From IMG/VR virus record IMGVR_UViG_3300034050_000451, positions 62,001 through 126,000 of that record: a stretch of 64,000 bases of DNA, one strand, 5' to 3'. Under the pieces are notes generated by a model. That model worked only from the letters and a program-made list of their open reading frames with translations, was not told where the DNA came from and ran no database searches. This document shows, piece by piece, positions 34,552 to 47,321 of this stretch (its first letter is position 1; each line of letters begins with the position of its first letter). A program made the position numbers and the translations under genes.

Positions 34552-37500
34552 TTATCCCGTTGGAAGATTACCAATAGCTATCCAATACCCATCAACACTA
34601 TCTAATACTAAACTAACACCAGATGTGGTAAGGTTATATATATGATTATATCCATTTGAACCATTTGAACTTCTATAAGATGCACAAGTTACAACCGGTG
34701 GTGAACCAAATGTTACAGGGAATGTTACGTTAGCAGAACTATTTATTCTTCCCCATTGTATAATACTACCATCTGATAATTTTTGGTAATTATTTGTAGA
34801 CATTGAACTAGCAACCGTATTTGTTTGGTGTTGGTTTCCTAATCCAATAAGGTTATCGGTATAAGTATATGCAAACCTATTTGATGAGTTACCAATATTG
34901 TACAATGAATCAGATTCAGGTATAATATCACCCTTTGAATTAATAGCTGTTGAGGTATCAACCCCAAGACCAACTGTTTTTTCAAAATATGATATACCAC
35001 CGGCTGCTTTAAGTACTTCTTGATTAGCTGAACCTGCTGGTTTTCTTGGTATTCTAACATAGGTATCAGGTGTTGATACTACTTGAATACCACCGGCTTT
35101 AATCTCAACGAAATTGGATGGAACAGATACATTTAATATAGTATCGTATGTTGGTGTATTTGCTAAAGTTGGCCCAACAGTATGTGATTGGTATGTAAAT
35201 GAATATGAATTAATACTGGAACCAATATTTGCTCTTTGACCCGAATACCCATAAAATCTAATTGAATATCTAAATCTAATATTACCAGTAGATGTTAGAT
35301 TCATTGAGCGCGTTACACCAGTTTGGGCAGAAACATTATTTTGATAACCACTTATAGTGTTGGTTGAAATATATGTCCAAGTACCATCATTATGTGATAT
35401 AATATCATCTGAAACATAGTTATGAACTCCAGGTACAGAAAATGTATATACCCATTCATCGGTTTTAATAATTTCAACACTATCAACTAATACCAATTTA
35501 ATACCATTACCATCTTTGATGTTAATCATACTTTTACCAGCAACTAATTCAACAGTCTTTATTTGTTTATTATCGTTTAACCAAAATCCATGCGAATCAG
35601 ATACTCTAATAGTTTTACCACCGGCTGATACTTTGTAAACTTTATCAACTTTTCTCTTTTTAATTTTAGCTATTTCAAATTCACTAAATTTGTTTACTTC
35701 AGTATTATCTAATTTATCATTCCAACTCCATGCTATTATTTTTTCACCTTCAACAACATCTTTAGCAAGAATAGTTTCACCAGATGATAATATAATTTTA
35801 GTATCACCAGTTACGGATACAAAACTTTCAAGTTTTACGTTGTGGGTTAATATACCATTAACATAATAAGTATGCTTACCAGATACTCTAATGTTATAAA
35901 CATCATCGGTTTTCTCATTTATAGTTATTGATGTTATCTCAACTTCTTCATTTTCTGAATTTAGGAATATATCTCCAACATTTATTTTATCAGTTGTTTT
36001 AATACACCAAACACCATTTTGTTTAATAATATGTTTGTGTGAGTGTGTACATTCAATTAATCCATTATTTATATTGTAAATTTCATTATCAGCATATGAT
36101 TTGATATCCAACACCTCTTCAATTGTTTTTTCGGAATCGGATATATGGGTTGCAGTCCAATCATTTTCTTCGGAATATTTTGGTGTTAATGAATCAATAT
36201 CTAATGATTTAATAAAATCACCAATTTGAATATCTTTAATTTGTTTGAATGAACCATCACCCATTTCAATTAGTGATGTTCCAACTAAACACGTTCCACC
36301 TCCCCCTTCTTCTATATATTCTCCGGTATAATAATTACCAGCATTATATGAACTAACAGCTGCGGCTGTTCCAAGTAAAGTTCTACCCACAACAACACCA
36401 GTAGAAATATTAACTGCTTCTAAATTTAATTCTGCGTATGCAACAGATGGTGATGAATACCCACCATGGAATTGCCCATTGAATGTAGGTAAATACGATG
36501 GGTATGATGTGGTATGACTAACTCCTGCTGGAATTGATACAGATACGGCTGGTATATTTAGTGCAACTTCAAGTGCTCCTGCTGCTGTAACATTATATGA
36601 ACCCGTTGATGGTAATGATACCATATAACTCGAATAAACAAAATTGGCATTAGATGTATTTGTTGTTACCGATTGTGGTGTTGGATATACAACCCCCGAA
36701 CCCGTAAACTGAAAGTATTTAACATCACCTGTGGTTGTTGTTAATTCATTTGAAGGTGATATAATTACCTTTTTTTCACTACCAGTATAAAATTGTAATT
36801 CAGGTAAAGATGGGTCAAATATTATTTCACTATTATCATCACGTAAATTACCACTATCAGCATCAATAATCCAATCTCCGATTCTACCATCAGTTGCGTT
36901 AATACTACCAGATAAACCTGCATTATTAGCGTTTACATTTCCATTAGCATCAACAGTAAAATTATATCTAATTGGATTTGAACCAGAAATTATTCCTATG
37001 TTAATAGCTCCTCCATTTATTTCAGAACCATTAATTGTTGAACCTTGAACGTTTCCTGAGAAATTAACACCATCACCCGTATAGTTCAAATATGCACCAT
37101 CTTTACTTCGTAATGAGAATAACGGGTCATCTGACCCAGATGGAAATCCTAAAAATACACCAACCTCATCAAAACTTTGACTTAATTGCCCCATTGAAAG
37201 GTATGGTTTATCGGATTGATTTAATGTTGAACCTGATGTTGATAATCGCAATCCCTCACCAGAAATTATTCTAAATTCACGACTACCCGCTGATAATGAA
37301 CCTTGTGTATATGTGTAATCACCATTGGTATTGGGATAATAATAAGAGGCACTTGCGGCGGAATTAAATTTAATTGTTTGACCATATGGATTTGATGCTG
37401 ATAGAAATAATCGAGTTTCATCTTCAGAAATTCCATAAATTTTCATTGCAGGGAAATTCAAAACATTACCAATACCCAATACAGCTACATCAAATGCTTT

Positions 37501-40500
37501 TATAATATGAGATTTTAAATCACTTGGTACTTCTGGATATGCACTTTCAGGTTGGTCATAAAGTAATTCTTGTATAAAATCATAATATGATAATGGAAAA
37601 TCACCAGTTTGCCTTACTTCTAAATAATTTGCACCAGATGGCCATGCAATATATGAGTCTAAAGAAGAAGATACGACTTGCAGTGATGATGTTGTGTGGA
37701 ATGCAATTTGATAAGATGAACTATCTGCATATAATCCATTTGATAAAAATAATTTTGAATTACCAATTTCACTATTACTTGCACTATTACTTGCGCTTAA
37801 TATTCTATGATTCGTAGTAAGTGTACCAAATACCGTTAAAAGTGCAGAACCACTACCATCAAATGGATTAGGTCCTTTAAGTGCTCTATTTGCTCCAAAA
37901 CCTACTAGATTATTCAACCCAGCATATACATCATTATGTAGAGATGCTGTTACTTCCGTATTATATTGATATCCAACGGGGAATGTAGTTGGGAAGTAGA
38001 TACCAGATGGGTCAATTATCCATCCACCAAATTTACCAGCAGATGCTGATACAATACCAGATACATTTAATTCATTTCCATCCCAACGTAAGTGTCTTGT
38101 ACCATCACCATTTTCAATTGATAATAATCCAGTTGTTCCAGCAGTTCCAGTAGGTCCACCATCTTCAGTTACACCAATATAAACTCCCTTTTGTCCATAA
38201 CCTTGAATTGATTGTCCGATTGATATATATGGTTCACTATCTCCACCATAAATTGTAATTTGTGGATTAACATCATATGAAGTTGCTGGTGAACCTACAT
38301 TAATTGTATTTTTAATAAATGATTCTTCGAAGATACCAATCTTAGCTGCTACAAAGAAATCTTCTTCTCCTAACTCTTCCCAATAATCAGTTTGAGTATT
38401 AGGTTGTTTGGCGCCAATTAAAGTATATCCAGAGGGTACAGTATCAATTGATTGAGTATATAATCCAGAAACAGTATTTGATAAATAAGTATGAGGACCC
38501 GATGGTAATTTAGTTGCGTAATACATCTCAGGTGTACCATCTCCATTCTTATCAAATAAAACTGCATCTCTCCTTTTCTGATTTAAATCAAAAAGATAAT
38601 TAGTTGAACCACTCCACTCTCCTCTAAATACAACACCAGGACCAGTTGCTCCTTCAAATACTGTTGTTAATGATTGTGATAAGAAATAAGTTGCTCTACC
38701 ATTTTCTATATCAACTTTATAAACAATTGTAGCTGCTTTATTATCTTGTGGATTTGCCCAAGTTTGAATTGGTGCCACCGTAGCAGGACTTCCTGTTGGT
38801 CGATTTGTTTGAGTTATAAATCCGGGTTTACTATATAATGATGCTGAGAATTCTCCCAATGTACCAATAACATTACCAATTAAATCTAATGTTTCCTCAG
38901 AGTAAGTACTAACATGCGTTAATTCAGTAGTTCCTTTAAATGCTCTAATTTGTGTACCAGTACCAGTTAACGTTGTACTTCCATCAGTTTCAACTAATAC
39001 AGCAGTTGCTGGATTTGTTAATGAAACTTGATAGTTATCAGCTCCCGCTTTTATACCAGTAATAGTTACTTCAGATGTAGCAATTACCCCAGAGGTAGTA
39101 TTACCATCTCTAATTTGAACTTGCCATGTTGCATTTTCGCCAGGAGATGTAGCATCACCGGAACCAATTTCAAATACATTATCAGTACTAATTGTACTAT
39201 AAGCAAATCCATCTTTAAAATATTGGTAATAAGTTTGAGATGCGGTAACATTAAATGCAGTTGCCGTTAAAAATATTGAATCTAAGGGAGAAGTTACTAC
39301 ACCATCTCCATCAAAATTAACTACTAATGATGATGCAGCCAAACTAACCGAACGAGCATTTACTCCTTCTTTTTGTTTTGTAAAAGATTGTGTACGAGTT
39401 ACATATTGTGAACCAGTTACAATACCATTTGTAATTGAAAATGGTCTTATTAAAATTGAATAATCAATACTAGCTGAATCATCCGTCATATTACTCATTG
39501 ATACAAATAACATTGTATCATTTAACCCATTATCAGTTGTTTCCGTTTTTGATGCAGTTAATAAACCAACAGTAATATTATTTACCGAAATAGATGCGGT
39601 AAATGTTCCTGGTAATTCTTGTGAATTAAACTCTAAATATTCATCACCTTGCTTAACTTTTAAAGTTGTGTTTGTTGTTGTGTAATCATATACACCACCA
39701 TTTTCATCAGCAGATAACGCGAGTATTGTTGGGGCTAATTCAATATTGATTGCAGCTGCCCCATCAACACTTTTTTGGAATTGTTGAAAGAAACTTTGTG
39801 TATAATAAGATGCGGTATAGAATGGATGAATTTCTAATTTATATTCAACACTAGCGGTTAAATCAGTCATATTGCTAAATCCACTTATACTCATAGATGC
39901 ATCTCCCATTATTTCATCAAAGGTAGAATATTGAATTCCTTTTGTAATAATAGATGCAGTTGTAAATGTACCCGGTTTTTTACTACTTGTAAATATAAGT
40001 GGTAAGAATCCCTGCGTTATAGTAATATCCGTAGCTGCTGTTTCATAACTAAATACTCTACCTCTTTGGTCAGCATTTAAAGTTATTGGATTTGGATTAA
40101 TTTTTACTACAATTGCATCATCACCCGGGTCTCCATCGGGTACAGATACGAATGTTTTATCAATACTAATAGATGCTGATGTATAATCTTCTAAATAAGT
40201 AAATTTAGTACTTAATTGTTTTGTTTGAACTGCTTCATAAAATGGAATACCATTTTGACCGGGAATACCACTATTAATTATATTATTATCAAAATCCGTT
40301 ACCTCAACACTAATTCTTCTATCAAATGTACCGGTAACATAAAACATATAGTAATATGGTTCAATTGTTTCCGGGTCAACAGACATCGATGGGAATATAT
40401 TCAATGTACCACTTATAGGTGCTTCGTTTGTTCCTCTCAAATAGAATGAACCAGTTACTCTACCAATATTTGGAGTAAACTCTCTTTCGGTTCTTGATTT

Positions 40501-42921
40501 AATACCAAATTGTTCGGTATCGATTGGTATAAATCCAGATGCTAAACCATCTTGTAAATCGGTTAGGATAATTGAAGTTAAAATATCATTTTGAGTTGGA
40601 CCATCCATAAGGAAAACCGTCAACTCCCCATCAATAGAATCTCTATTAAATGTTGCGTTATAATTCAACTCACCACTACCAGTTGTACCAGCTTTTAATC
40701 CTCTAATAAATCCACTACTACTTGCTTCAGATAATAGATAATATGATGATGTTGGTTGTCCTAATGGTGTTAATGATGATGATAATACTCTTAACTTTGC
40801 ATCGGAGAATCCAATTTGTGGTAATCCATTTTTTAATATAATTTCATTTGTACCATCAATACGAATAGCTTGTAGTTCTAAATCGTTATCAGAACTATTC
40901 TTTATAAATGTTCCTCTATAAGGTCTAATTTCAAAGTTTACACCACCCTTACCATCAGCAACTCTTGTAATTACAACTTCATCAGTTACTCCTTCTACTT
41001 CTCCAGTAAATCTGATATATTGTACAGTGATATCATTTCTAGAACCAGTAAAATTAGAAACGTTTAATGTTGGAGTAAGTGTGTTTATATTATTTAATAA
41101 ACCCGGATATCTTCCACCAATATATTCAGATGGTAATATATAATCACCAAACTCATCATAGGCACCAGACGTATATGTGATTGAACCAGTTATTACACTT
41201 GTTTCAACATTAAATATAATTGTAGTTGGTGGTAATGGATTAGCAGGTGCAGATGCGGAATCAAACGCAAAATATAATTGATTTGGTGTAATTGTAAGAC
41301 TCTTATTATAAAGATTCAAATTACCACCATCAAATGTTTTTGTTTTTTCTACTGCTACTGGAATGTAATTATTGTTAATATCGTAGAATTCAAAACGATA
41401 ATCAAATGTTTCTTTTTGTAATGTTTTTGGTACAGTTTGTACAAATGTTATTTCATCAGGTGAAAATGAAGTTTCTTGCGATGCTTTAAAACTAATATCA
41501 CTTATATACCAATCACTTCCCTTAACTTCAAAATATAATCTAGCATTATCAAAATCATTAGCTATAATATTTTCACTTAAGTTTACTTTTTGTAATACTG
41601 AAGTTGATGAATCAATTGTAGTAATTGTTTGAGATGTAGGTGTTCCATTTAATGAACCACTTAAAAATACTTTAATAAAATCACCAGTTGTATTTTGTGA
41701 TTTTCTTGCATTTAAATTTAATGTATATTCAACACCTTGTTGGATACTTAAACTTTGAGTTGTATAAAAATACGTTCCCGCATTTGAATTTATTTTGGCC
41801 GAATTAAATAAGAAATCTCTATTAAATTCAACCGAAACTGCATTTGATGAGGTTAACCAATAATTATCTAACCTAATATCAGTTAAATTACCATAGTATT
41901 CTTCAGTAGCAGTTACAGTTTCAATATCTCTTAATAATTCATTAGATTCTAATTGTAAATCTTGAACAAATTCATAATCAGTAAGATTTGATTGAGAACG
42001 TCTAAATACTTTAACTCTTGCCGCATCACCAACGAATGTTTTCATATCGGTGATATTGATTTTTGCAAATGAACCAGTAAGTGCAGTTGCTAAATCAGAA
42101 ACCCCCTCCAAATAATTGAATGTTACTGAGTAGTTTTGATTTGTAAATGATTTTACAATACCATTTTGAGAATATGGTGTAGTTACTATAATTTCAGTAT
42201 CGCTTACAATATCATCAATTATACTACTATAATTTAAGCTATCTACCGTAATAGTTTGACCAACAACAGACCCTGTCCAATTATCACCACTAGCTACATT
42301 TAATCTGTATGATGTTGGTAATGTGAATCCCGTTAATTTTGCGTTTTCATTTGGTACTAAAGGAACACCATTAACAGTACCTGTCTTAGTTATTGCTAAT
42401 GAATTATTATTAAAAATTGGTTTATTTATTTCAGTAATCTCAACTTGAGGTCTACGATAAAATCTAACTCTATCTTCATTGGCAAGGTTTTTATTAACTT
42501 GAAAAGTTCTTTCCCATTTAACATTATATGCACCCTTCCATTCAGCAGGAATATCTCTTGTTACACCATTGTCAACATATTGATTAAGTTCACCTAATAC
42601 AGTAACTTTACCTAATCCAATTGGAGTATCTTCATAAATGTAAACTGCTATTAGTTTGGAAATTCCTTCATAATATTCAGGTATACCATTTCCAGGTTCG
42701 TAATAGATAGGGTCACCATTAACATCTAATATTTCAATTTTGATTTCAGTAGATGGTTGCAAGTATTGCGAACCTTCAATTAGGAATCCATTTTTACCAC
42801 CTGTAAACGTATCATTAAATTCAGTAATTCTGAAATAATCCGAATTTGGGTTATTATCTATTACAAATGTACCAAATGATGATAAATTTTGTTCTGGTGA
42901 ATATTTTTTAATTCTAGCCAT
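34552..42921 (-). CDS. Giant tail fibre/tip protein with Ig-like repeats, two tandem Hint domains and a C-terminal fibre domain
   Basis: Repeated (D/E)G..A..V.L modules, YNIGNSSNRF, C-terminal YQKLSDGSIIQWG...VTFPVTF; followed by a chaperone gene. Confidence 0.8.
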   Translation of the reverse strand: MARIKKYSPEQNLSSFGTFVIDNNPNSDYFRITEFNDTFTGGKNGFLIEGSQYLQPSTEIKIEILDVNGDPIYYEPGNGIPEYYEGISKLIAVYIYEDTPIGLGKVTVLGELNQYVDNGVTRDIPAEWKGAYNVKWERTFQVNKNLANEDRVRFYRRPQVEITEINKPIFNNNSLAITKTGTVNGVPLVPNENAKLTGFTLPTSYRLNVASGDNWTGSVVGQTITVDSLNYSSIIDDIVSDTEIIVTTPYSQNGIVKSFTNQNYSVTFNYLEGVSDLATALTGSFAKINITDMKTFVGDAARVKVFRRSQSNLTDYEFVQDLQLESNELLRDIETVTATEEYYGNLTDIRLDNYWLTSSNAVSVEFNRDFLFNSAKINSNAGTYFYTTQSLSIQQGVEYTLNLNARKSQNTTGDFIKVFLSGSLNGTPTSQTITTIDSSTSVLQKVNLSENIIANDFDNARLYFEVKGSDWYISDISFKASQETSFSPDEITFVQTVPKTLQKETFDYRFEFYDINNNYIPVAVEKTKTFDGGNLNLYNKSLTITPNQLYFAFDSASAPANPLPPTTIIFNVETSVITGSITYTSGAYDEFGDYILPSEYIGGRYPGLLNNINTLTPTLNVSNFTGSRNDITVQYIRFTGEVEGVTDEVVITRVADGKGGVNFEIRPYRGTFIKNSSDNDLELQAIRIDGTNEIILKNGLPQIGFSDAKLRVLSSSLTPLGQPTSSYYLLSEASSSGFIRGLKAGTTGSGELNYNATFNRDSIDGELTVFLMDGPTQNDILTSIILTDLQDGLASGFIPIDTEQFGIKSRTEREFTPNIGRVTGSFYLRGTNEAPISGTLNIFPSMSVDPETIEPYYYMFYVTGTFDRRISVEVTDFDNNIINSGIPGQNGIPFYEAVQTKQLSTKFTYLEDYTSASISIDKTFVSVPDGDPGDDAIVVKINPNPITLNADQRGRVFSYETAATDITITQGFLPLIFTSSKKPGTFTTASIITKGIQYSTFDEIMGDASMSISGFSNMTDLTASVEYKLEIHPFYTASYYTQSFFQQFQKSVDGAAAINIELAPTILALSADENGGVYDYTTTNTTLKVKQGDEYLEFNSQELPGTFTASISVNNITVGLLTASKTETTDNGLNDTMLFVSMSNMTDDSASIDYSILIRPFSITNGIVTGSQYVTRTQSFTKQKEGVNARSVSLAASSLVVNFDGDGVVTSPLDSIFLTATAFNVTASQTYYQYFKDGFAYSTISTDNVFEIGSGDATSPGENATWQVQIRDGNTTSGVIATSEVTITGIKAGADNYQVSLTNPATAVLVETDGSTTLTGTGTQIRAFKGTTELTHVSTYSEETLDLIGNVIGTLGEFSASLYSKPGFITQTNRPTGSPATVAPIQTWANPQDNKAATIVYKVDIENGRATYFLSQSLTTVFEGATGPGVVFRGEWSGSTNYLFDLNQKRRDAVLFDKNGDGTPEMYYATKLPSGPHTYLSNTVSGLYTQSIDTVPSGYTLIGAKQPNTQTDYWEELGEEDFFVAAKIGIFEESFIKNTINVGSPATSYDVNPQITIYGGDSEPYISIGQSIQGYGQKGVYIGVTEDGGPTGTAGTTGLLSIENGDGTRHLRWDGNELNVSGIVSASAGKFGGWIIDPSGIYFPTTFPVGYQYNTEVTASLHNDVYAGLNNLVGFGANRALKGPNPFDGSGSALLTVFGTLTTNHRILSASNSASNSEIGNSKLFLSNGLYADSSSYQIAFHTTSSLQVVSSSLDSYIAWPSGANYLEVRQTGDFPLSYYDFIQELLYDQPESAYPEVPSDLKSHIIKAFDVAVLGIGNVLNFPAMKIYGISEDETRLFLSASNPYGQTIKFNSAASASYYYPNTNGDYTYTQGSLSAGSREFRIISGEGLRLSTSGSTLNQSDKPYLSMGQLSQSFDEVGVFLGFPSGSDDPLFSLRSKDGAYLNYTGDGVNFSGNVQGSTINGSEINGGAINIGIISGSNPIRYNFTVDANGNVNANNAGLSGSINATDGRIGDWIIDADSGNLRDDNSEIIFDPSLPELQFYTGSEKKVIISPSNELTTTTGDVKYFQFTGSGVVYPTPQSVTTNTSNANFVYSSYMVSLPSTGSYNVTAAGALEVALNIPAVSVSIPAGVSHTTSYPSYLPTFNGQFHGGYSSPSVAYAELNLEAVNISTGVVVGRTLLGTAAAVSSYNAGNYYTGEYIEEGGGGTCLVGTSLIEMGDGSFKQIKDIQIGDFIKSLDIDSLTPKYSEENDWTATHISDSEKTIEEVLDIKSYADNEIYNINNGLIECTHSHKHIIKQNGVWCIKTTDKINVGDIFLNSENEEVEITSITINEKTDDVYNIRVSGKHTYYVNGILTHNVKLESFVSVTGDTKIILSSGETILAKDVVEGEKIIAWSWNDKLDNTEVNKFSEFEIAKIKKRKVDKVYKVSAGGKTIRVSDSHGFWLNDNKQIKTVELVAGKSMINIKDGNGIKLVLVDSVEIIKTDEWVYTFSVPGVHNYVSDDIISHNDGTWTYISTNTISGYQNNVSAQTGVTRSMNLTSTGNIRFRYSIRFYGYSGQRANIGSSINSYSFTYQSHTVGPTLANTPTYDTILNVSVPSNFVEIKAGGIQVVSTPDTYVRIPRKPAGSANQEVLKAAGGISYFEKTVGLGVDTSTAINSKGDIIPESDSLYNIGNSSNRFAYTYTDNLIGLGNQHQTNTVASSMSTNNYQKLSDGSIIQWGRINSSANVTFPVTFGSPPVVTCASYRSSNGSNGYNHIYNLTTSGVSLVLDSVDGYWIAIGNLPTG
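35389..35817 (-). other. Hint (intein-like) domain 2, 143 aa
   Basis: SVTGDTKIILSSG, RVSDSH, VYTFSVPGVHNYVSDDIISHN; +1 residue is Asp. Confidence 0.85.
35839..36291 (-). other. Hint (intein-like) domain 1, 151 aa
   Basis: CLVGTSLIEMGDG (block A), ECTHSH (block B), VYNIRVSGKHTYYVNGILTHN (blocks F/G); +1 residue is Val. Confidence 0.88.
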
Positions 42922-42950: not shown

Positions 42951-42958
42951 TATAAGTA
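42951..42958 (-). promoter_or_regulatory. Putative phage late promoter (TACTTATA) of the giant fibre gene
   Basis: Recurrent motif 29 nt upstream of 42921. Confidence 0.6.
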
Positions 42959-42979
42959 TTTGTATTTTTTAAATATACA

Positions 42980-43014
42980 TACTTATTCTAAAGAAAACTA
43001 AAGAGTTCTAAAGA
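42980..43014 (+). promoter_or_regulatory. Putative promoter (TACTTATT) followed by three CTAAAGA repeats at 10-bp spacing (candidate operator)
   Basis: CTAAAGA at 42988, 42998 and 43008, upstream of the RHH gene. Confidence 0.6.
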
Positions 43015-43038
43015 ATGGTTAGTTTAATACGATAAATT

Positions 43039-43212
43039 ATGAATAAGAAATATGCTATGTTACAAATTGATGCTGAGGTTCATCAATTGTTAAAAGATTT
43101 TTGTAAAGATAAGGGTTATAAAATGAATGGGTTGGTTGAGAGTCTAATTAAAGATAAAGTATCCCCATTTAAAACTCAACAACCAACCAATATTTTAAGA
43201 ACTAGAACTTAA
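43039..43212 (+). CDS. Ribbon-helix-helix DNA-binding protein, 57 aa (absent from the ORF track)
   Basis: MNKKYAMLQIDAEVHQLLKDFCKDKGYKMNGLVESLIKDKV...: alternating beta strand, helix, conserved Gly, helix; fills an otherwise empty intergenic gap. Confidence 0.75.
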   Translation: MNKKYAMLQIDAEVHQLLKDFCKDKGYKMNGLVESLIKDKVSPFKTQQPTNILRTRT

Positions 43213-46200
43213 CGCTAGAGAACCCATTCACTTTTTTAATTTCCATTAAGGAATCTACTACATCTCGCATTGAATCAATATGTGATATAATCATCACAAA
43301 GTCAAATTGAGTTTTAAGATAAGCGAACAACATATACAATGATGTTAAGTTCTCATTATCTAATGTTCCAAATCCTTCATCCACTACTAAGAAGTTTGGA
43401 CGAGGCAGGTTACATACGTTGATTAGAGCGATTCTAATTGCCAATCCTGATATAAACTTCTCCATACCACTACACATCTCTAAACTCCATTTCTGGTCAT
43501 CATAGACAATATTAGCGTTGATGTTTTTACCATCCATATCCAATTGAACTCCGAACTCTACAATTTGACCTAAGATATTATTAACCTCACCTTCAATCAT
43601 AGGAAGTGCCTTTGATATCAATTCATATGATATACCATCCTTACTTAATGCATTTAAATAGTATTCATATAATCCAAATTGTTCTTCTAACTCCTCAACC
43701 TCTTTTATTCTCGCCTCAATAGTTTCCTTTTGATTTGTAAGGGATGATACATCACCATTTAAGTTAAGAAGTAATTTATTCTTTTGCTCTACTAATGTTT
43801 TAGAAGATGCTAAATCAGTTCTTACAATTTGAATTTCAGTTCTGATTTCTTTGTTCTTTTGGATTTGTTTTTCATTCTCCAAATAATCAGCTATAAGTTG
43901 TGTAACTTCCTTAACTTCATTCTCTAGCTTAACTTCTTGAGTTTCAATTGTTGATAACTTGTTAATAAGTGTTGATAACTCTCGTTCTACCTTAGTTTCA
44001 TCTGATTTGGTATCACTTAACAACTTCCAACTTACTTCATAATTCAATAATGAATTTACAGATGATTCTAATTCTAACTTAGTTTCATTATACTGAGATT
44101 GCCTTTCCTTAAATTCTTTAATAGATTCAACGGCTTCCTTTTTAGCTTCTAAAATAGTTGCTGAGTTTTCCATACAAACATTACAATCTTCATTGTACTT
44201 ATGGGAATCTAAATGTTCCTTTTTATCATATAAAGATTCTAACTTAATATCAATCTTTTCAATTTCGTTTGTAAGGGTTTGTAATTGCTCCCTTTGAGTT
44301 TTTAATCTACCAATACCACTTTCTATATCTGCTTCATCAAATCCCTCCAATGCCCCTAATAACCTATCTCTATCGGATTGTAATATAACGATATCAGCTT
44401 TAGTTTTAGATTGTTGTTTCAACAAGTCGATTAAATTATTTCCTAATGTCGATTTTTTATTTTCTAATTCAGTTAATGAATATGTATCCGATTTTAAAGG
44501 AACTATTTTTTCGTTGAGAGAAATTAATTTTTGATTGTAGGTATCCACACTTCCAGTTGCTTCATTAAGTTGAGCTTCTATCAAACTATACTCTTTGTTC
44601 TTACTAATAAGGTTAGTTTCTATATCAGCTAATCGTTGAGTGAAATCATCCTGCTTAAACTTTCTGATTAGAGAAGCGTTATCCCTATTTTCATCCGATG
44701 CTATGGTGTATAACTTATCAAATACATCAACTCCCATAAACTGAGCAAGAATCTCTTTACGTTCGGTTTGTGATTTATCAATAAATAGTGCGTTATTACC
44801 CTGAAGTGATAATGTAGTTAATACAAAATCCTCATAACTTCCCATATATTGTTGGATGATGGAATTGGTTTCCCTCCTTTGCTCTCCATTCAAAGAGGTA
44901 ACCAACCCATCTTCAACTTTCCAAAAGTCAACATCAACTTTGATGTTTTTTCCTTTATTAATTATTTTTGCTTTCCTTTCAATAAAGTAATTAATCCCAT
45001 CGATTTGGAAATTAAGTTTACAGTCAAATTCCGTTTTTCTATTATTAAGAATGTTCTTTGCTAAATACGTTCTACTTGTCTTGTCAAAAATACAAAATGA
45101 AATAGCATCAAATAGAGATGATTTACCACTAGCATTTGGTGCAAATACACCAACCATTCCCTTAGCGTTATCAAAACGAATTAAGTTGTTTGGTCCATAT
45201 GAAAACATATTTGAAAACTCAAATGTCTTTGGTATCCATTGTATATTAGGAATACTTTCCTCATCAACTAATCGAGTATTTAATTCTCTATTAATTTGTT
45301 GAATCTTATCAATCGTATCAGCATCAGCGAAGTATTGTCTTTTTAGATAATCTCTAATCAATTCATTTTGGAATTCAACATCCCTAACATTACCAATAGA
45401 AAGTTTATCATCATAATTACCAGTCTTTTGTTTGGATAATGTATCCATTCTAGTTACTGTAAATTCTTCAACTTTGTATTTCTTTTTGATATCAGTTAAT
45501 ACTCTTTTAATTTTAGATGGGTCAGTATTGGAAATACGAACTCTCAAACGAGGTTTTGCCGGCATATCCGTAACCGCTGGTACAACCCCATTAATTACAT
45601 CTAATGTATAAAACCCATAATCATTTTCAATATCAAATTCCTCAAATGTTCTTGATTCAACATCCCATAAAAGGTAACCATGCTTATCCAATGATTCTCC
45701 GTGGTTTTGTTGGATAAGTGAACCAGCATATGCAATGGTAGGAATACCCAACGTTTGTCTTTTATGGATATCACCTAACATAACCATATCAAATCCTTCA
45801 AACATATCAGTTGTAAATGAATTTGATGATACAGTATAACCAATATCAGTTTCTGCATTATTTACAGGCCCGTGAAATAAACAAATTTTATTCTCACCTT
45901 CTACCACTTCAGCCTTTGGCCAATTCTCTTTTTTGTCAAGTATCGAATACACAACAAAAGTAATATTGTTAAAGGGATAGATGCCAGTATCTCTAAGATA
46001 GTGAATTCTTTCATTATTTAAGTTTTCTACGATTGGTGTAAGTACATCCAATCTATAATTATTATTTAAGTTACAGTCGTGATTTCCGGTAATTAAAAAT
46101 GTTTCTTTTAAATTAGCACATTCGGTTAGAAACCAACTAATCTCTCTAACCAATTCCGGACTCATTTCAGTTTTAGCATGGGCAATATCACCAGCCAAAT

Positions 46201-46333
46201 AGATAATAGAATTTTCAATATTATCTTTTCTAACATTTTCTAAAAACTTATTGAATACATCTCTGTACTCATTATGTCTTTTTAAGTTACGGATATGTAA
46301 ATCCGCTAAGTGATAGATTTTTTCTACTTTCAT
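43202..46333 (-). CDS. Fused Mre11/SbcD-Rad50/SbcC (gp47-gp46-like) recombination nuclease
   Basis: Phosphoesterase motifs DLH, GD, GNHD, HG, GDIH; Walker A APNASGKSS, Zn-hook CNVC, signature CSGMEKF, Walker B VVDEGFGTLD, ISH. Confidence 0.92.
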   Translation of the reverse strand: MKVEKIYHLADLHIRNLKRHNEYRDVFNKFLENVRKDNIENSIIYLAGDIAHAKTEMSPELVREISWFLTECANLKETFLITGNHDCNLNNNYRLDVLTPIVENLNNERIHYLRDTGIYPFNNITFVVYSILDKKENWPKAEVVEGENKICLFHGPVNNAETDIGYTVSSNSFTTDMFEGFDMVMLGDIHKRQTLGIPTIAYAGSLIQQNHGESLDKHGYLLWDVESRTFEEFDIENDYGFYTLDVINGVVPAVTDMPAKPRLRVRISNTDPSKIKRVLTDIKKKYKVEEFTVTRMDTLSKQKTGNYDDKLSIGNVRDVEFQNELIRDYLKRQYFADADTIDKIQQINRELNTRLVDEESIPNIQWIPKTFEFSNMFSYGPNNLIRFDNAKGMVGVFAPNASGKSSLFDAISFCIFDKTSRTYLAKNILNNRKTEFDCKLNFQIDGINYFIERKAKIINKGKNIKVDVDFWKVEDGLVTSLNGEQRRETNSIIQQYMGSYEDFVLTTLSLQGNNALFIDKSQTERKEILAQFMGVDVFDKLYTIASDENRDNASLIRKFKQDDFTQRLADIETNLISKNKEYSLIEAQLNEATGSVDTYNQKLISLNEKIVPLKSDTYSLTELENKKSTLGNNLIDLLKQQSKTKADIVILQSDRDRLLGALEGFDEADIESGIGRLKTQREQLQTLTNEIEKIDIKLESLYDKKEHLDSHKYNEDCNVCMENSATILEAKKEAVESIKEFKERQSQYNETKLELESSVNSLLNYEVSWKLLSDTKSDETKVERELSTLINKLSTIETQEVKLENEVKEVTQLIADYLENEKQIQKNKEIRTEIQIVRTDLASSKTLVEQKNKLLLNLNGDVSSLTNQKETIEARIKEVEELEEQFGLYEYYLNALSKDGISYELISKALPMIEGEVNNILGQIVEFGVQLDMDGKNINANIVYDDQKWSLEMCSGMEKFISGLAIRIALINVCNLPRPNFLVVDEGFGTLDNENLTSLYMLFAYLKTQFDFVMIISHIDSMRDVVDSLMEIKKVNGFSSVKF

Positions 46334-47268
46334 AAATTATTAAGTTTGGATAGGATTAAGGAATCCCATTCCGTTATATTTGCGTTTTTAACTAAATCAT
46401 TAACCTCATCAAATCCCATATCACCAGCATCTTTACCAATTGGAATAATGTTTTTAACACTTATCCCATTTTTAGTAAAGTATTCAGAATGTTTAACTGA
46501 ATCACTAACAGCATCCGAATCTAATATGATTGTGATTTCCTTAACGCCTCTTTCAAATATTTTCTTCTTTAATGTTTTTGGTAAAAACTTACCTAAGATT
46601 GGAATTACATTTCTCTTAACTGAGAATGAATCAAATACACCTTCCACCAATGTAATAGGTTCGTTCCAATTGATTTGATTATCAAATACAATTACATCTC
46701 TACTAACAGGTGGATTTTTATATTTCATTGTAGCATCTTCATAAAACGAACGAGCTACAAAATAATTTAATTCATCATTCTCATTATAAGATGGTACAAT
46801 TACTCTACCACCATATAATCCATCTTCACAATACCCCATACCATATTTAAGAATCTCATCTTTAGAAATTCCTCTACGATGTAGATATCCCAACGCTTGG
46901 TTGTATGCGATGTTGATTGATTTTGGTTTGATGTGTAATGGTTTGAATTCTTTTGGAAGTTGTAGTTTAATTACTTCCTCATTCTCATCCGAACTAGTTG
47001 GTGTGTAATCACCATAAATGGATATTATTTTACCCAACTCATTTCTATCCACATTTAATTTGCGGAGTAATGATTGGATACTACGTCCTTTTGAATCACA
47101 AACCCAACAATGCCAATATTGGGTATCCAAATTGACTTGTAGTTTCTTTTTGTGGTGATGACAAAATGGACAATGATGGGTTTGTTCGTTGCCCTTCAAA
47201 GAAGTACCAACGCCTAAAACACCATCTAATACATTTATAACAATTAATTTATTTCTAGCGGAGAGCAT
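46330..47268 (-). CDS. DNA primase-like protein (Zn finger + TOPRIM)
   Basis: CPFC...HCWVC, LVEGVFD and LDSDA. Confidence 0.85.
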   Translation of the reverse strand: MLSARNKLIVINVLDGVLGVGTSLKGNEQTHHCPFCHHHKKKLQVNLDTQYWHCWVCDSKGRSIQSLLRKLNVDRNELGKIISIYGDYTPTSSDENEEVIKLQLPKEFKPLHIKPKSINIAYNQALGYLHRRGISKDEILKYGMGYCEDGLYGGRVIVPSYNENDELNYFVARSFYEDATMKYKNPPVSRDVIVFDNQINWNEPITLVEGVFDSFSVKRNVIPILGKFLPKTLKKKIFERGVKEITIILDSDAVSDSVKHSEYFTKNGISVKNIIPIGKDAGDMGFDEVNDLVKNANITEWDSLILSKLNNL

Positions 47269-47289: not shown

Positions 47290-47321
47290 CAAATATACGA
47301 ATAATATTTGATATATCCAAA
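47290..47321 (-). promoter_or_regulatory. Bacteroidota-type promoter for the primase and Mre11-Rad50 genes
   Basis: Minus strand TTTG-N20-TATATTTG. Confidence 0.75.

What the first reader, a model, noticed from the sequence alone, without database searches (positions are those of the whole stretch)
42951..43212. Unannotated lone + strand RHH gene with helically phased repeats, divergent from the giant fibre gene
Seen: a 57-aa ORF (43039-43212) with a ribbon-helix-helix pattern is the only credible + strand gene. CTAAAGA occurs three times at exact 10-bp spacing immediately after a TACTTATT promoter-like motif, which is back-to-back with the fibre promoter at 42951. Known: RHH dimers bind cooperatively to short repeats one helical turn apart. 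Inference: an autoregulated switch that may also tune fibre expression; its 3' end overlaps the convergent Mre11-Rad50 stop.
Basis: partly seen in the sequence, partly recalled or inferred. Interest (0 to 1): 0.6.

Follow-up and report, generated by a model that had tools for sequence, protein, structure and literature searches.

The report
Self-regulating small repressor gene in phage
A conserved 57-residue DNA-binding protein gene in a lake jumbo phage sits behind three evenly spaced 7-base repeats that very probably are its own binding sites, an ordinary kind of self-regulating switch found here in an unusual, swappable form.

Summary
ORF 43039-43212(+) is a real, conserved gene for an Arc-like ribbon-helix-helix (RHH) protein: PHROG 3180 E 2.7e-7, codon-position conservation 0.92/0.93/0.68, and a homodimer model at 0.46 against 0.00 for controls. 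CTAAAGA stands at 42988, 42998 and 43008, a phased pattern unique in the 270,865-bp genome. It directly follows ATACTTATT, a variant of a motif (ATAYTTATA) found before about 45 genes. The same motif on the other strand precedes the giant fibre gene.

Across relatives the heptads are the best-conserved intergenic bases (0.95 identity against 0.46-0.53 nearby). They always keep the 10-bp phase, in 2-4 copies. Two protein types go with two heptad types: Y-A/K-M with CTAAAGA, Y-T-T with CYATAGA. In near-identical phages, promoter, repeats and gene are exchanged as one cassette, sometimes with a homing-endonuclease-like gene. Some relatives carry cargo genes (DUF2452, DUF7796) between repeats and RHH.

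The best reading is an autorepressor whose operator overlaps its own transcription start. Control of the fibre gene is untested and not favoured, because the cassette edge excludes the fibre motif and an RHH-less clade keeps the fibre. This is a new member of a known kind, of moderate interest. No binding or expression experiment exists.

The parts
42952..42960 (-). Promoter-like motif A (ATACTTATA) of the giant fibre gene, 38 nt before its ATG at 42921
   Evidence: One of 53 ATA[TC]TTATA sites in gene orientation against 7 in the opposite orientation. About 45 of them lie 6-77 nt before a start codon. Mean pairwise identity 0.87 in relatives.
42979..42987 (+). Promoter-like motif A variant (ATACTTATT) of the RHH gene
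   Evidence: Same motif class on the + strand, with identity 0.89 in relatives. It is present before the repeats in every clade examined. The transcription start inferred from leaderless-like motif A genes (ATG 12-13 nt after motif start) falls at about 42991, inside repeat 1.
42988..43014 (+). Putative operator: three CTAAAGA heptads at 42988, 42998 and 43008. As 10-bp units they read TTCTAAAGAA / AACTAAAGAG / TTCTAAAGAA, from 42986.
   Evidence: Unique in window and genome. Heptad identity is 0.95 against 0.46-0.53 in neighbouring intergenic DNA. The 10-bp phase is kept in all clades, with 2-4 copies.
43015..43035 (+). Six-codon mini-ORF (ATG GTT AGT TTA ATA CGA TAA), a likely remnant of a deleted DUF2452 cargo gene
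   Evidence: Relatives L090/L115/L118 carry a 131-aa DUF2452 ORF here. It starts with the same heptad-ATG fusion and ends with ...GATAAAATTATG. Most other relatives have the RHH ATG 0-2 nt after the last heptad.
43039..43212 (+). RHH (Arc-like) repressor gene, 57 aa
   Evidence: - Profile matches: PHROG 3180 E 2.7e-7, hit by 25 of 25 family members.
- Relatives: 85 protein clusters.
- Coding signal: codon-position identity 0.92/0.93/0.68.
- Monomer model: helices 12-25 and 29-41.
- Dimer model: ipSAE 0.46 against 0.00 for controls, with ribbon contacts 7:9 and 8:8.
- Fold search: Foldseek top hits are nearly all RHH proteins.
43202..46333 (-). Convergent Mre11-Rad50-like fusion gene. Its stop overlaps the RHH 3' end by 11 bp. 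It is the last gene of an operon behind a host-type promoter near 47298.
   Evidence: Pfam Metallophos, AAA_23 and SMC_N. Motif B (TTTGG-N17-19-GTATATTTG) lies at genome 109298, before the primase gene 46330-47268.
34552..42921 (-). Divergent giant tail-fibre-like gene, 2789 aa
   Evidence: Gp53-like_C tail-fibre domain at the C-terminus and two Hint/intein-like modules. The N-terminus is conserved in relatives.

Best explanation
The 57-aa protein is a dimeric ribbon-helix-helix repressor of the Arc/CopG/omega kind. Its gene is read from a phage-specific promoter motif of the -10/-7-box type without a -33 box (ATACTTATT). This is the same class that precedes the fibre and head-tail adaptor genes.

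The three CTAAAGA heptads begin one base after that motif and are spaced one helical turn apart. They cover the inferred transcription start and the first ~25 transcribed bases. Three dimers would line up on one face of the DNA, bind cooperatively and block RNA polymerase, so the gene shuts itself down once enough protein has been made.

Promoter, operator and gene form one self-contained cassette. Related phages use it to carry extra genes under the same control: DUF2452 or DUF7796 in front of the RHH gene, and a homing-endonuclease-like gene behind it. In the window's phage the cargo appears to have been deleted, leaving the bare regulator.

Shown here:
- the gene is real and conserved, with an RHH fold and a dimer model;
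- the repeats are unique, phased and constrained;
- repeat type and protein type go together;
- the unit is exchanged as a block.

Inferred:
- the protein binds the repeats;
- the transcription start lies inside repeat 1;
- binding represses transcription.
For: - **Gene and fold:** (PHROG 3180 in 25 of 25 members; RHH-clan Pfam families below threshold in 24 of 25).
- **Purifying selection:**
- **Repeat uniqueness:**
- **Repeat conservation and constant 10-bp phase across clades down to ~50% Rad50 identity:**
- **Two specificity types:** proteins with Y-[AKS]-M have A at unit position 6 in 39 of 43 units. Proteins with Y-T-T have T in 14 of 14. The units are partly palindromic (TCTATAGA perfect, TCTAAAGA 6 of 8), as a two-fold symmetric dimer would need.
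- **Promoter class:**
- **Cassette behaviour:**. Flanks are 95-100% identical and divergence is confined to about -63 to +160 of the ATG.
- **Cargo genes stay behind the same promoter and repeats:**
- **Local role:** there is a single operator-like site and a single RHH of this family in the genome.
- **Known RHH proteins bind arrays of short repeats:** omega/ParB of pSM19035 on contiguous heptads (PMC9499535).
Against: - No experiment shows binding, the transcription start or repression.
- The RNA evidence is an unstranded contig of a relative in a metatranscriptome and could be Rad50 read-through or DNA.
- The match of protein type and repeat type is expected from linkage alone. The two lie 30 bp apart and are swapped together, so it is weak as independent proof of recognition.
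- Pfam RHH families are all below their curated cut-offs.
- The monomer model is poor (pLDDT 60).
- The dimer score may partly reflect memory of solved RHH dimers.
- In the window's phage a lone autorepressor with no other target has no obvious purpose.
Confidence: 0.65

Rival explanations
1. The RHH protein bound at the repeats mainly controls the divergent giant fibre promoter, or acts as a late switch. The heptads lie about 44, 54 and 64 bp upstream of the inferred fibre start. Bound dimers could there activate or hinder polymerase, or decide which of two overlapping back-to-back promoters fires.
For: The two motif A copies are only 19 bp apart, back to back, so polymerases at the two sites should compete. 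The divergent arrangement fibre motif - RHH motif - repeats is kept in nearly all relatives.
Against: - The spacing between the two motifs varies from 11 to 22 bp among relatives.
- The cassette exchange boundary lies just after the fibre motif, so fibres work with either repressor type.
- Clade L075/L078 has no RHH, and there the fibre gene follows Rad50 directly.
Confidence: 0.12
2. The repeats are not the RHH's target. They would be bound by another factor, or act in the RNA leader, for example as an A-rich unstructured translation enhancer for a host without Shine-Dalgarno pairing. The RHH would then act elsewhere or on a protein partner.
For: The repeats lie in the inferred 5' leader and the last copy abuts the ATG in most relatives. 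The host is probably a Bacteroidota, given its -33/-7 type promoters (PMC7641319).
Against: - Exact 10-nt periodicity and partial palindromy have no use in a leader.
- Other motif A genes have no such repeats.
- When a cargo gene sits between the repeats and the RHH, the repeats stay at the promoter rather than at the RHH start.
- No Rfam match.
- No other operator-like site for the RHH exists in the genome.
Confidence: 0.1
3. The protein is the antitoxin, or another protein-binding half, of a toxin-antitoxin or defence/anti-defence pair. The conserved C-terminal tail (P-x-N-[IV]-L-[RK]) would be the partner-binding part.
For: Many RHH proteins are antitoxins. JGI names some copies HicB-like, with weak PHROG 9151 HicB-like hits in 3 of 25 members. 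The tail motif N51/L53 is nearly invariant.
Against: - No conserved partner gene: the neighbours differ between relatives (none, DUF2452, DUF7796, or a homing-endonuclease-like gene).
- At 57 aa the protein is too short to hold a HicB RNase H-like domain.
- Antitoxins of this kind also autoregulate through such operators, so this rival mostly adds a partner that is not seen.
Confidence: 0.06
4. The + strand transcript matters more than the protein. Late transcription from this promoter would run, with no terminator, antisense into the early primase/Mre11-Rad50 operon and damp it by collision or antisense RNA.
For: The genes converge and overlap by 11 bp with no terminator-like site. The Rad50 operon has a host-type early promoter and the RHH a late-type motif. 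A metatranscriptome contig of a relative runs from 43051 to 44277.
Against: - The ORF is under clear protein-level selection.
- In many relatives another gene (UDP-glucose dehydrogenase-like) lies between the RHH and Rad50.
- The strand of the RNA contig is unknown.
Confidence: 0.05

Closest known systems
Arc and Mnt repressors of Salmonella phage P22 (immI region)
   Same: A small phage RHH protein about 50 aa long. Dimers bind neighbouring sites about one helical turn apart at their own promoter. The promoters are divergent and back to back. PHROG calls this family 'Arc-like repressor', and Arc structures are among the fold matches.
   Different: - No match to the Arc Pfam family, and sequence identity to Arc chains is 15-17% in the fold matches.
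- Three to four tandem units rather than one two-subsite operator.
- The phage shows no sign of lysogeny functions in this window.
- The promoter is of a phage-specific, probably late, class.
- There is no antirepressor target gene.

The P22 operator details are from my own knowledge and were not tested here.
Omega (ParB of pSM19035), an RHH repressor that binds arrays of 7-bp heptads
   Same: An RHH dimer recognises one heptad. Arrays of two or more copies give cooperative binding at promoters, and heptads may be direct or inverted (PMC9499535). In relative L039 one unit is inverted.
   Different: Omega heptads are contiguous with a 7-bp period, so dimers wind around the helix. Here the period is 10 bp, so dimers would sit on one face. 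No ParA-like partner gene lies beside this gene.
MetJ with tandem 8-bp metboxes; CopG; ParG
   Same: RHH dimers line up on tandem, partly palindromic units with dimer-dimer contacts. ParG and CopG are among the top fold matches.
   Different: The unit length is 10 bp rather than 8 or 13, there is no sign of a co-repressor, and the context is plasmid or chromosomal rather than a jumbo phage. Details of those operators are from my own knowledge.
Free-standing homing endonuclease cassettes of T4-like phages (seg/mob genes, marker exclusion)
   Same: In L059 and L032 a homing-endonuclease-like ORF (phrog_314, E 3.5e-8) sits beside the RHH. The neighbouring ~220 bp are replaced in otherwise 95-100% identical phages, as in co-conversion of flanking markers.
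   Different: The window's own phage has no such gene, and endonuclease activity and target are untested. The T4 behaviour is from my own knowledge.

Membership tests
Ribbon-helix-helix superfamily (Arc/MetJ/CopG fold, Pfam clan Met_repress) | Strand-helix-helix topology in about 45 residues | tested here: met
   The AF2 model has residues 1-11 extended and helices 12-25 and 29-41 (pLDDT is only 60). Foldseek top matches are almost all RHH chains (ParG, CopG, Arc, NikR, omega, SvtR, AvtR), with TM 0.5-0.6 but E above 0.4.
Ribbon-helix-helix superfamily (Arc/MetJ/CopG fold, Pfam clan Met_repress) | Obligate homodimer with an intermolecular antiparallel two-stranded ribbon | tested here: met
   The two-copy model scores 0.46 against a best control of 0.00. 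That mark was reached by 21 of 30 solved homodimers and 0 of 23 single chains. Runs agree in at least 92% of contacts and the partner's pLDDT is at least 68. Contacts 7:9, 8:8, 10:6 and 36:36 fit a ribbon centred on residue 8. This is a model only and may draw on memory of solved RHH dimers.
Ribbon-helix-helix superfamily (Arc/MetJ/CopG fold, Pfam clan Met_repress) | Significant match to a curated family profile | tested here: inconclusive
   PHROG 3180 'Arc-like repressor' E 2.7e-7, matched by 25 of 25 members. Pfam RHH-clan families (RepB-RCR_reg in 24 of 25, plus RHH_4, ParG, DUF6364) are all below their gathering scores. A profile search of PDB sequences found nothing significant.
Ribbon-helix-helix superfamily (Arc/MetJ/CopG fold, Pfam clan Met_repress) | Glycine-containing turn between the helices, with helix B's N-terminus aimed at the DNA backbone (G-x-S/T/N pattern, from my own knowledge) | tested here: met
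   G26 is invariant, followed by Y-K-(M/I/L)-(N/S/G) at the start of helix B.
Ribbon-helix-helix superfamily (Arc/MetJ/CopG fold, Pfam clan Met_repress) | Sequence-specific binding of repeated DNA sites through the ribbon | not testable with these tools
   Only indirect evidence: phased, constrained, partly palindromic repeats next to the gene, and two repeat types matching two ribbon types.
Type II antitoxin of the RHH class (incl. HicB-like naming by JGI) | Adjacent, co-transcribed toxin gene conserved with it; for HicB, an N-terminal RNase H-like domain | tested here: not met
   Neighbours vary or are absent. The protein is 57 aa and consists of the RHH core plus a 16-residue tail.
Type Ib partition ParB/ParG-omega class | Adjacent Walker-type ParA ATPase gene and a centromere-like repeat array | tested here: not met
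   No such gene flanks the RHH in the window or in any relative's locus inspected. The rest of the genome was not scanned for ParA.
P22 Arc family proper | Match to the Arc family profile | tested here: not met
   No Arc family hit in Pfam at E up to 10 or among 25 members at E up to 1.

The most novel reading that the evidence does not exclude
The repressor-operator pair is a strain-specific identity device. Near-identical jumbo phages carry alternative, non-cross-reacting pairs (CTAAAGA with Y-A/K-M ribbons, CYATAGA with Y-T-T ribbons) right beside the fibre promoter, and these are exchanged by homing-endonuclease-driven conversion. In mixed infections only the matching repressor would act on a genome's divergent promoter pair, biasing late gene or cargo expression towards kin. 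That would be a heteroimmunity-like system in virulent phages, and at the same time an insulated dock for accessory genes.
Probability: 0.07. Interest if true: 0.75.

Novelty: new member of a known kind. Interest (0 to 1): 0.4.

Why it matters
Self-repressing RHH proteins with tandem operators are textbook biology, so the core finding is ordinary. Four points add value.

- It gives a first handle on transcription control in an uncultured clade of ~260-270 kb lake phages. Their host is probably a Bacteroidota. The work separates two promoter classes and identifies one regulator with a defined candidate operator.
- Nature supplies two matched repressor/operator variants in near-identical backgrounds. 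That makes a ready specificity-swap experiment on how an RHH ribbon reads DNA.
- The cassette looks like a small, self-limiting expression unit that accepts foreign genes, which could be of use as a genetic part for Bacteroidota.
- It documents local cassette exchange next to a homing-endonuclease-like gene.

Tried and rejected
**Searches that gave nothing useful**
- PDB sequence searches with the single protein and with the family profile were not significant.
- The best profile hit was the first two helices of the SinR helix-turn-helix (E 0.1). I rejected it because the protein has no third helix and the fold matches are RHH.
- tblastn of the protein against 50,697 deposited phage genomes gave no match. 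blastn of the region gave only two short Rad50-related matches.
- Rfam gave only a sub-threshold chance hit. The sigma-70 promoter scan was below the shuffle expectation and found no terminator.
- Sigma70_r2 was not found in the genome, so the factor reading motif A is unknown.
- The DUF2452 cargo gene is absent from the window's genome.
- The homing-endonuclease-like ORF has no Pfam match and matches only PHROG 314.

**Expression**
- Only two metatranscriptome runs hold small shares of the region, and only as contigs, which carry no strand or end information. This is inconclusive.

**Arguments I dropped**
- I first took the co-switching of protein type and repeat type on the Rad50 tree as independent co-evolution. 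I dropped that because the two are swapped as one linked block.
- A possible host-type -7 box on the - strand inside the intergenic region (GTATATTTA at genome 104978) lacks a -33 box and was not pursued.

**Not run, and constraints**
- No claim here rests on the absence of distant relatives.

Full report
**Where this is**

The window is bases 62001-126000 of a 270,865-bp virus record rated complete. GC is about 31%. In a crude gene call, 306 of 318 ORFs lie on the - strand. Near-identical DNA occurs in many lake-water metagenomes. The genome carries about 38 copies of TTTGG-N17-19-(TTC)GTATATTTG in gene orientation, against 3 in the opposite orientation. This is the -33/-7 promoter type, with the -7 box TAnnTTTG reported as conserved in Flavobacterium and Bacteroides (PMC7641319). 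The host is therefore probably a Bacteroidota. No cultured phage in the deposited collection resembles the region.

**Checking the observation**

- The ORF 43039-43212(+) encodes 57 residues.
- CTAAAGA stands at 42988, 42998 and 43008.
- The phased pair pattern is found only here in the window (0.07 expected). It is also found only here in the whole genome, even with one mismatch allowed.
- ATACTTATT (42979-42987) directly precedes the first repeat.
- ATACTTATA on the other strand (42960 to 42952) lies 38 nt before the ATG of the 2789-aa gene. That gene ends in a gp53-like tail-fibre domain.
- The ORF's last 11 bases overlap the stop of a convergent 1043-aa Metallophos + AAA_23/SMC_N protein, a fused Mre11-Rad50-like enzyme.
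- It is the only non-overlapped + strand ORF in the window, but not in the genome.

**The promoter-like motif is real and belongs to a class**

K-mer enrichment in intergenic DNA gave a second motif besides the host-type promoter: ATA[TC]TTATA.
- It occurs 53 times in gene orientation against 7 in the opposite orientation.
- About 45 copies lie 6-77 nt before a start codon.
- It has no -33 partner.
- It precedes the fibre gene and a head-tail adaptor homologue. The host-type motif precedes the primase gene that heads the Mre11-Rad50 operon.

I therefore take it for a phage-specific, probably late, promoter element. This is an inference. No sigma-70 region 2 homologue was found.

In six genes the ATG lies 12-13 nt after the motif's first base. 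This suggests that transcription starts about there. Applied to the RHH side, the start falls near 42991, inside repeat 1.

**The gene is real and encodes a ribbon-helix-helix dimer**
- Forty-one viral contigs and 85 protein clusters carry homologues at 63-100% identity.
- In 15 non-redundant relatives, mean pairwise identity at codon positions 1, 2 and 3 is 0.92, 0.93 and 0.68. That is the signature of a translated gene.
- PHROG 3180 'Arc-like repressor' matches at E 2.7e-7, and matches 25 of 25 family members.
- Pfam RHH-clan families match only below their cut-offs.
- The AlphaFold monomer has low confidence (pLDDT 60) but the expected layout: an extended N-terminus and helices 12-25 and 29-41.
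- Its Foldseek matches are not significant for so small a protein, but they are almost all RHH proteins: ParG, CopG, Arc, MatP, NikR, omega and the viral SvtR and AvtR.
- A two-copy model scored 0.46 against a best control of 0.00. That mark was reached by 21 of 30 solved homodimers and 0 of 23 single chains. Runs agree in at least 92% of contacts and pLDDT is at least 68.
- Contacts 7:9, 8:8, 10:6 and 36:36 describe an antiparallel ribbon centred on residue 8 with crossed second helices. A6 and I10 touch the partner's helices, so M7 and Q9 (and Y5) should face outwards, towards DNA. This last point is inference.

**The repeats are the most constrained non-coding bases, and their phase never changes**

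In the 15-sequence alignment the mean pairwise identities are:

| Region | Identity |
|---|---|
| Heptads | 0.95 |
| 3-bp spacers between heptads | 0.76 |
| The two promoter motifs | 0.87 and 0.89 |
| Fibre leader | 0.46 |
| Stretch between the two motifs | 0.53 |

More distant relatives were reached through the Rad50 gene, an HMM of the RHH family and two assembly look-ups. They all show the same plan: fibre start, fibre motif, 11-22 bp, RHH motif, then 2-4 heptad-like units at an exact 10-bp period, then the ATG within 0-3 nt.

Read as 10-bp units, the window has TTCTAAAGAA, AACTAAAGAG and TTCTAAAGAA. TCTAAAGA is a 6-of-8 palindrome. The TCTATAGA of some relatives is a perfect one, and in L039 one unit is inverted. 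This suits a two-fold symmetric dimer on each unit.

**Two protein types, two repeat types, one cassette**

Proteins whose ribbon reads Y-[A/K/S]-M have units WWCTAAAGAA, with A at unit position 6 in 39 of 43 units. Proteins with Y-T-T have ATMYATAGAA, with T in 14 of 14 units.

On a Rad50 tree the two types are interleaved among almost identical phages. Pairwise alignments of three such pairs show flanks 95-100% identical. Divergence is confined to about -63 to +160 of the RHH start. The left edge falls just after the fibre's own motif. Promoter, repeats and gene are thus exchanged as one block.

Because they are linked, the match of types is not independent proof of recognition. It does show that the three parts are kept together as a unit.

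In two of the three pairs the Y-K-M cassette also brings a 152-163-aa ORF that matches PHROG 314 'homing endonuclease' at E 3.5e-8 (no Pfam match). That offers a mechanism for the exchange.

**Cargo**
- In L090, L115 and L118 a 131-aa DUF2452 gene lies between the repeats and the RHH gene, and the promoter and repeats stay in front.
- In L058 a DUF7796 gene takes that place. L121 has a related ORF.
- The window's phage has 24 extra bases between repeat 3 and the RHH start. These read as a six-codon ORF sharing the heptad-ATG fusion and the GATAAA(A)TTATG junction with the DUF2452 arrangement.
- I read this as a deletion remnant, with moderate confidence.
- DUF2452 is absent from the rest of the genome.

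**How it most likely works**

The RHH dimer binds each 10-bp unit. Three dimers on one DNA face cover the transcription start of their own promoter and repress it.

This accounts for several observations:
- the position, phase and partial palindromy of the repeats;
- their constraint;
- their fidelity to the promoter rather than to the RHH start codon when cargo intervenes;
- the single site in the genome and the single gene of this family.

It is the behaviour of Arc, CopG and omega. Omega binds arrays of heptads, though contiguous ones (PMC9499535). I put this reading at 0.65.

**The fibre question**

The heptads lie roughly 44-64 bp upstream of the inferred fibre start, and the two promoters are close enough to compete. 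An effect is therefore possible. Three observations speak against it being the main role:
- the variable spacing between the motifs;
- the cassette edge just after the fibre motif;
- a clade with the fibre gene directly after Rad50 and no RHH.

**What remains unexplained**
- A bare autorepressor with no cargo has no evident function in this phage.
- The C-terminal tail carries a nearly invariant N-[IV]-L motif in all clades. Its role is unknown; it might mediate contacts between dimers or bind a partner.
- Expression is not shown. The only RNA-library evidence is an unstranded contig of a ~91%-identical relative covering 43051-44277.

**Verdict**

The autoregulation reading is supported by comparative evidence but remains untested. 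The fibre-tuning reading is left open and not favoured. This is a new member of a known kind of system, with an unusual cassette biology, and of moderate interest.

Noticed in passing
window 34552-42921 (-), residues about 2209-2511 of the 2789-aa protein: The giant tail-fibre-like protein contains two tandem Hint/intein-like modules: Hint/PT-HINT at 2209-2359 and Intein_splicing at 2398-2511, all below the Pfam cut-offs. The first starts with Cys and ends in THN followed by Val. The second ends in SHN followed by Asp. They look like non-canonical (bacterial intein-like, cleaving) domains rather than splicing inteins.
   Followed up: partly
whole genome G000; in the window e.g. 47298 and 47562 (-): There are about 38 copies of TTTGG-N17-19-(TTC)GTATATTTG in gene orientation, mostly in genome 109-270 kb. 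These are Bacteroidota-type -33/-7 promoters, so they point to the host phylum and mark the early genes, including the primase and Mre11-Rad50 operon.
   Followed up: partly
whole genome G000; in the window e.g. 2776, 28915, 34116, 55557, 57017 (-): A second motif, ATA[TC]TTATA, occurs 53 times in gene orientation against 7 in the opposite orientation, about 45 of them 6-77 nt before starts. Six genes have the ATG only 12-13 nt after the motif start, which suggests leaderless transcripts.
   Followed up: partly
L059:7143-7631(-) and the equivalent ORF in L032: A 152-163-aa ORF directly after the Y-K-M type RHH gene matches PHROG 314 'homing endonuclease' (E 3.5e-8). It is absent from near-identical sister phages, with local replacement of the neighbouring ~220 bp.
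   Followed up: partly
L090:3609-4004(+); L058:7343-8017(-); L121:28-579(+): Cargo genes of unknown function are inserted between the repeats and the RHH gene in some relatives: DUF2452 (E 3e-9) and DUF7796 (E 1.8e-7, plus a weaker relative in L121).
   Followed up: partly
L090:4164-4982(-), also L095, L115, L118: Many relatives carry a UDP-glucose/GDP-mannose dehydrogenase-like gene (272-276 aa) between the RHH gene and Rad50. The window's phage lacks it.
   Followed up: no
window 43163-43209 (residues 42-57 of the RHH protein): The otherwise variable, proline-rich C-terminal tail keeps an N-[IV]-L-[RK] motif in every clade, even at about 30 bits to the family profile. Its role is unknown.
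   Followed up: no
G000 1-238 and 270627-270865: The first ~238 bases of the record recur at its end, with a few differences around bases 100-140. The record therefore probably closes on itself or has short terminal repeats, although it is classed as linear.
   Followed up: partly
L075:7188-10370(+): In the most distant Rad50 clade (about 52% identity) there is no RHH gene. The fibre-like gene follows Rad50 on the same strand after 46 bp.
   Followed up: no
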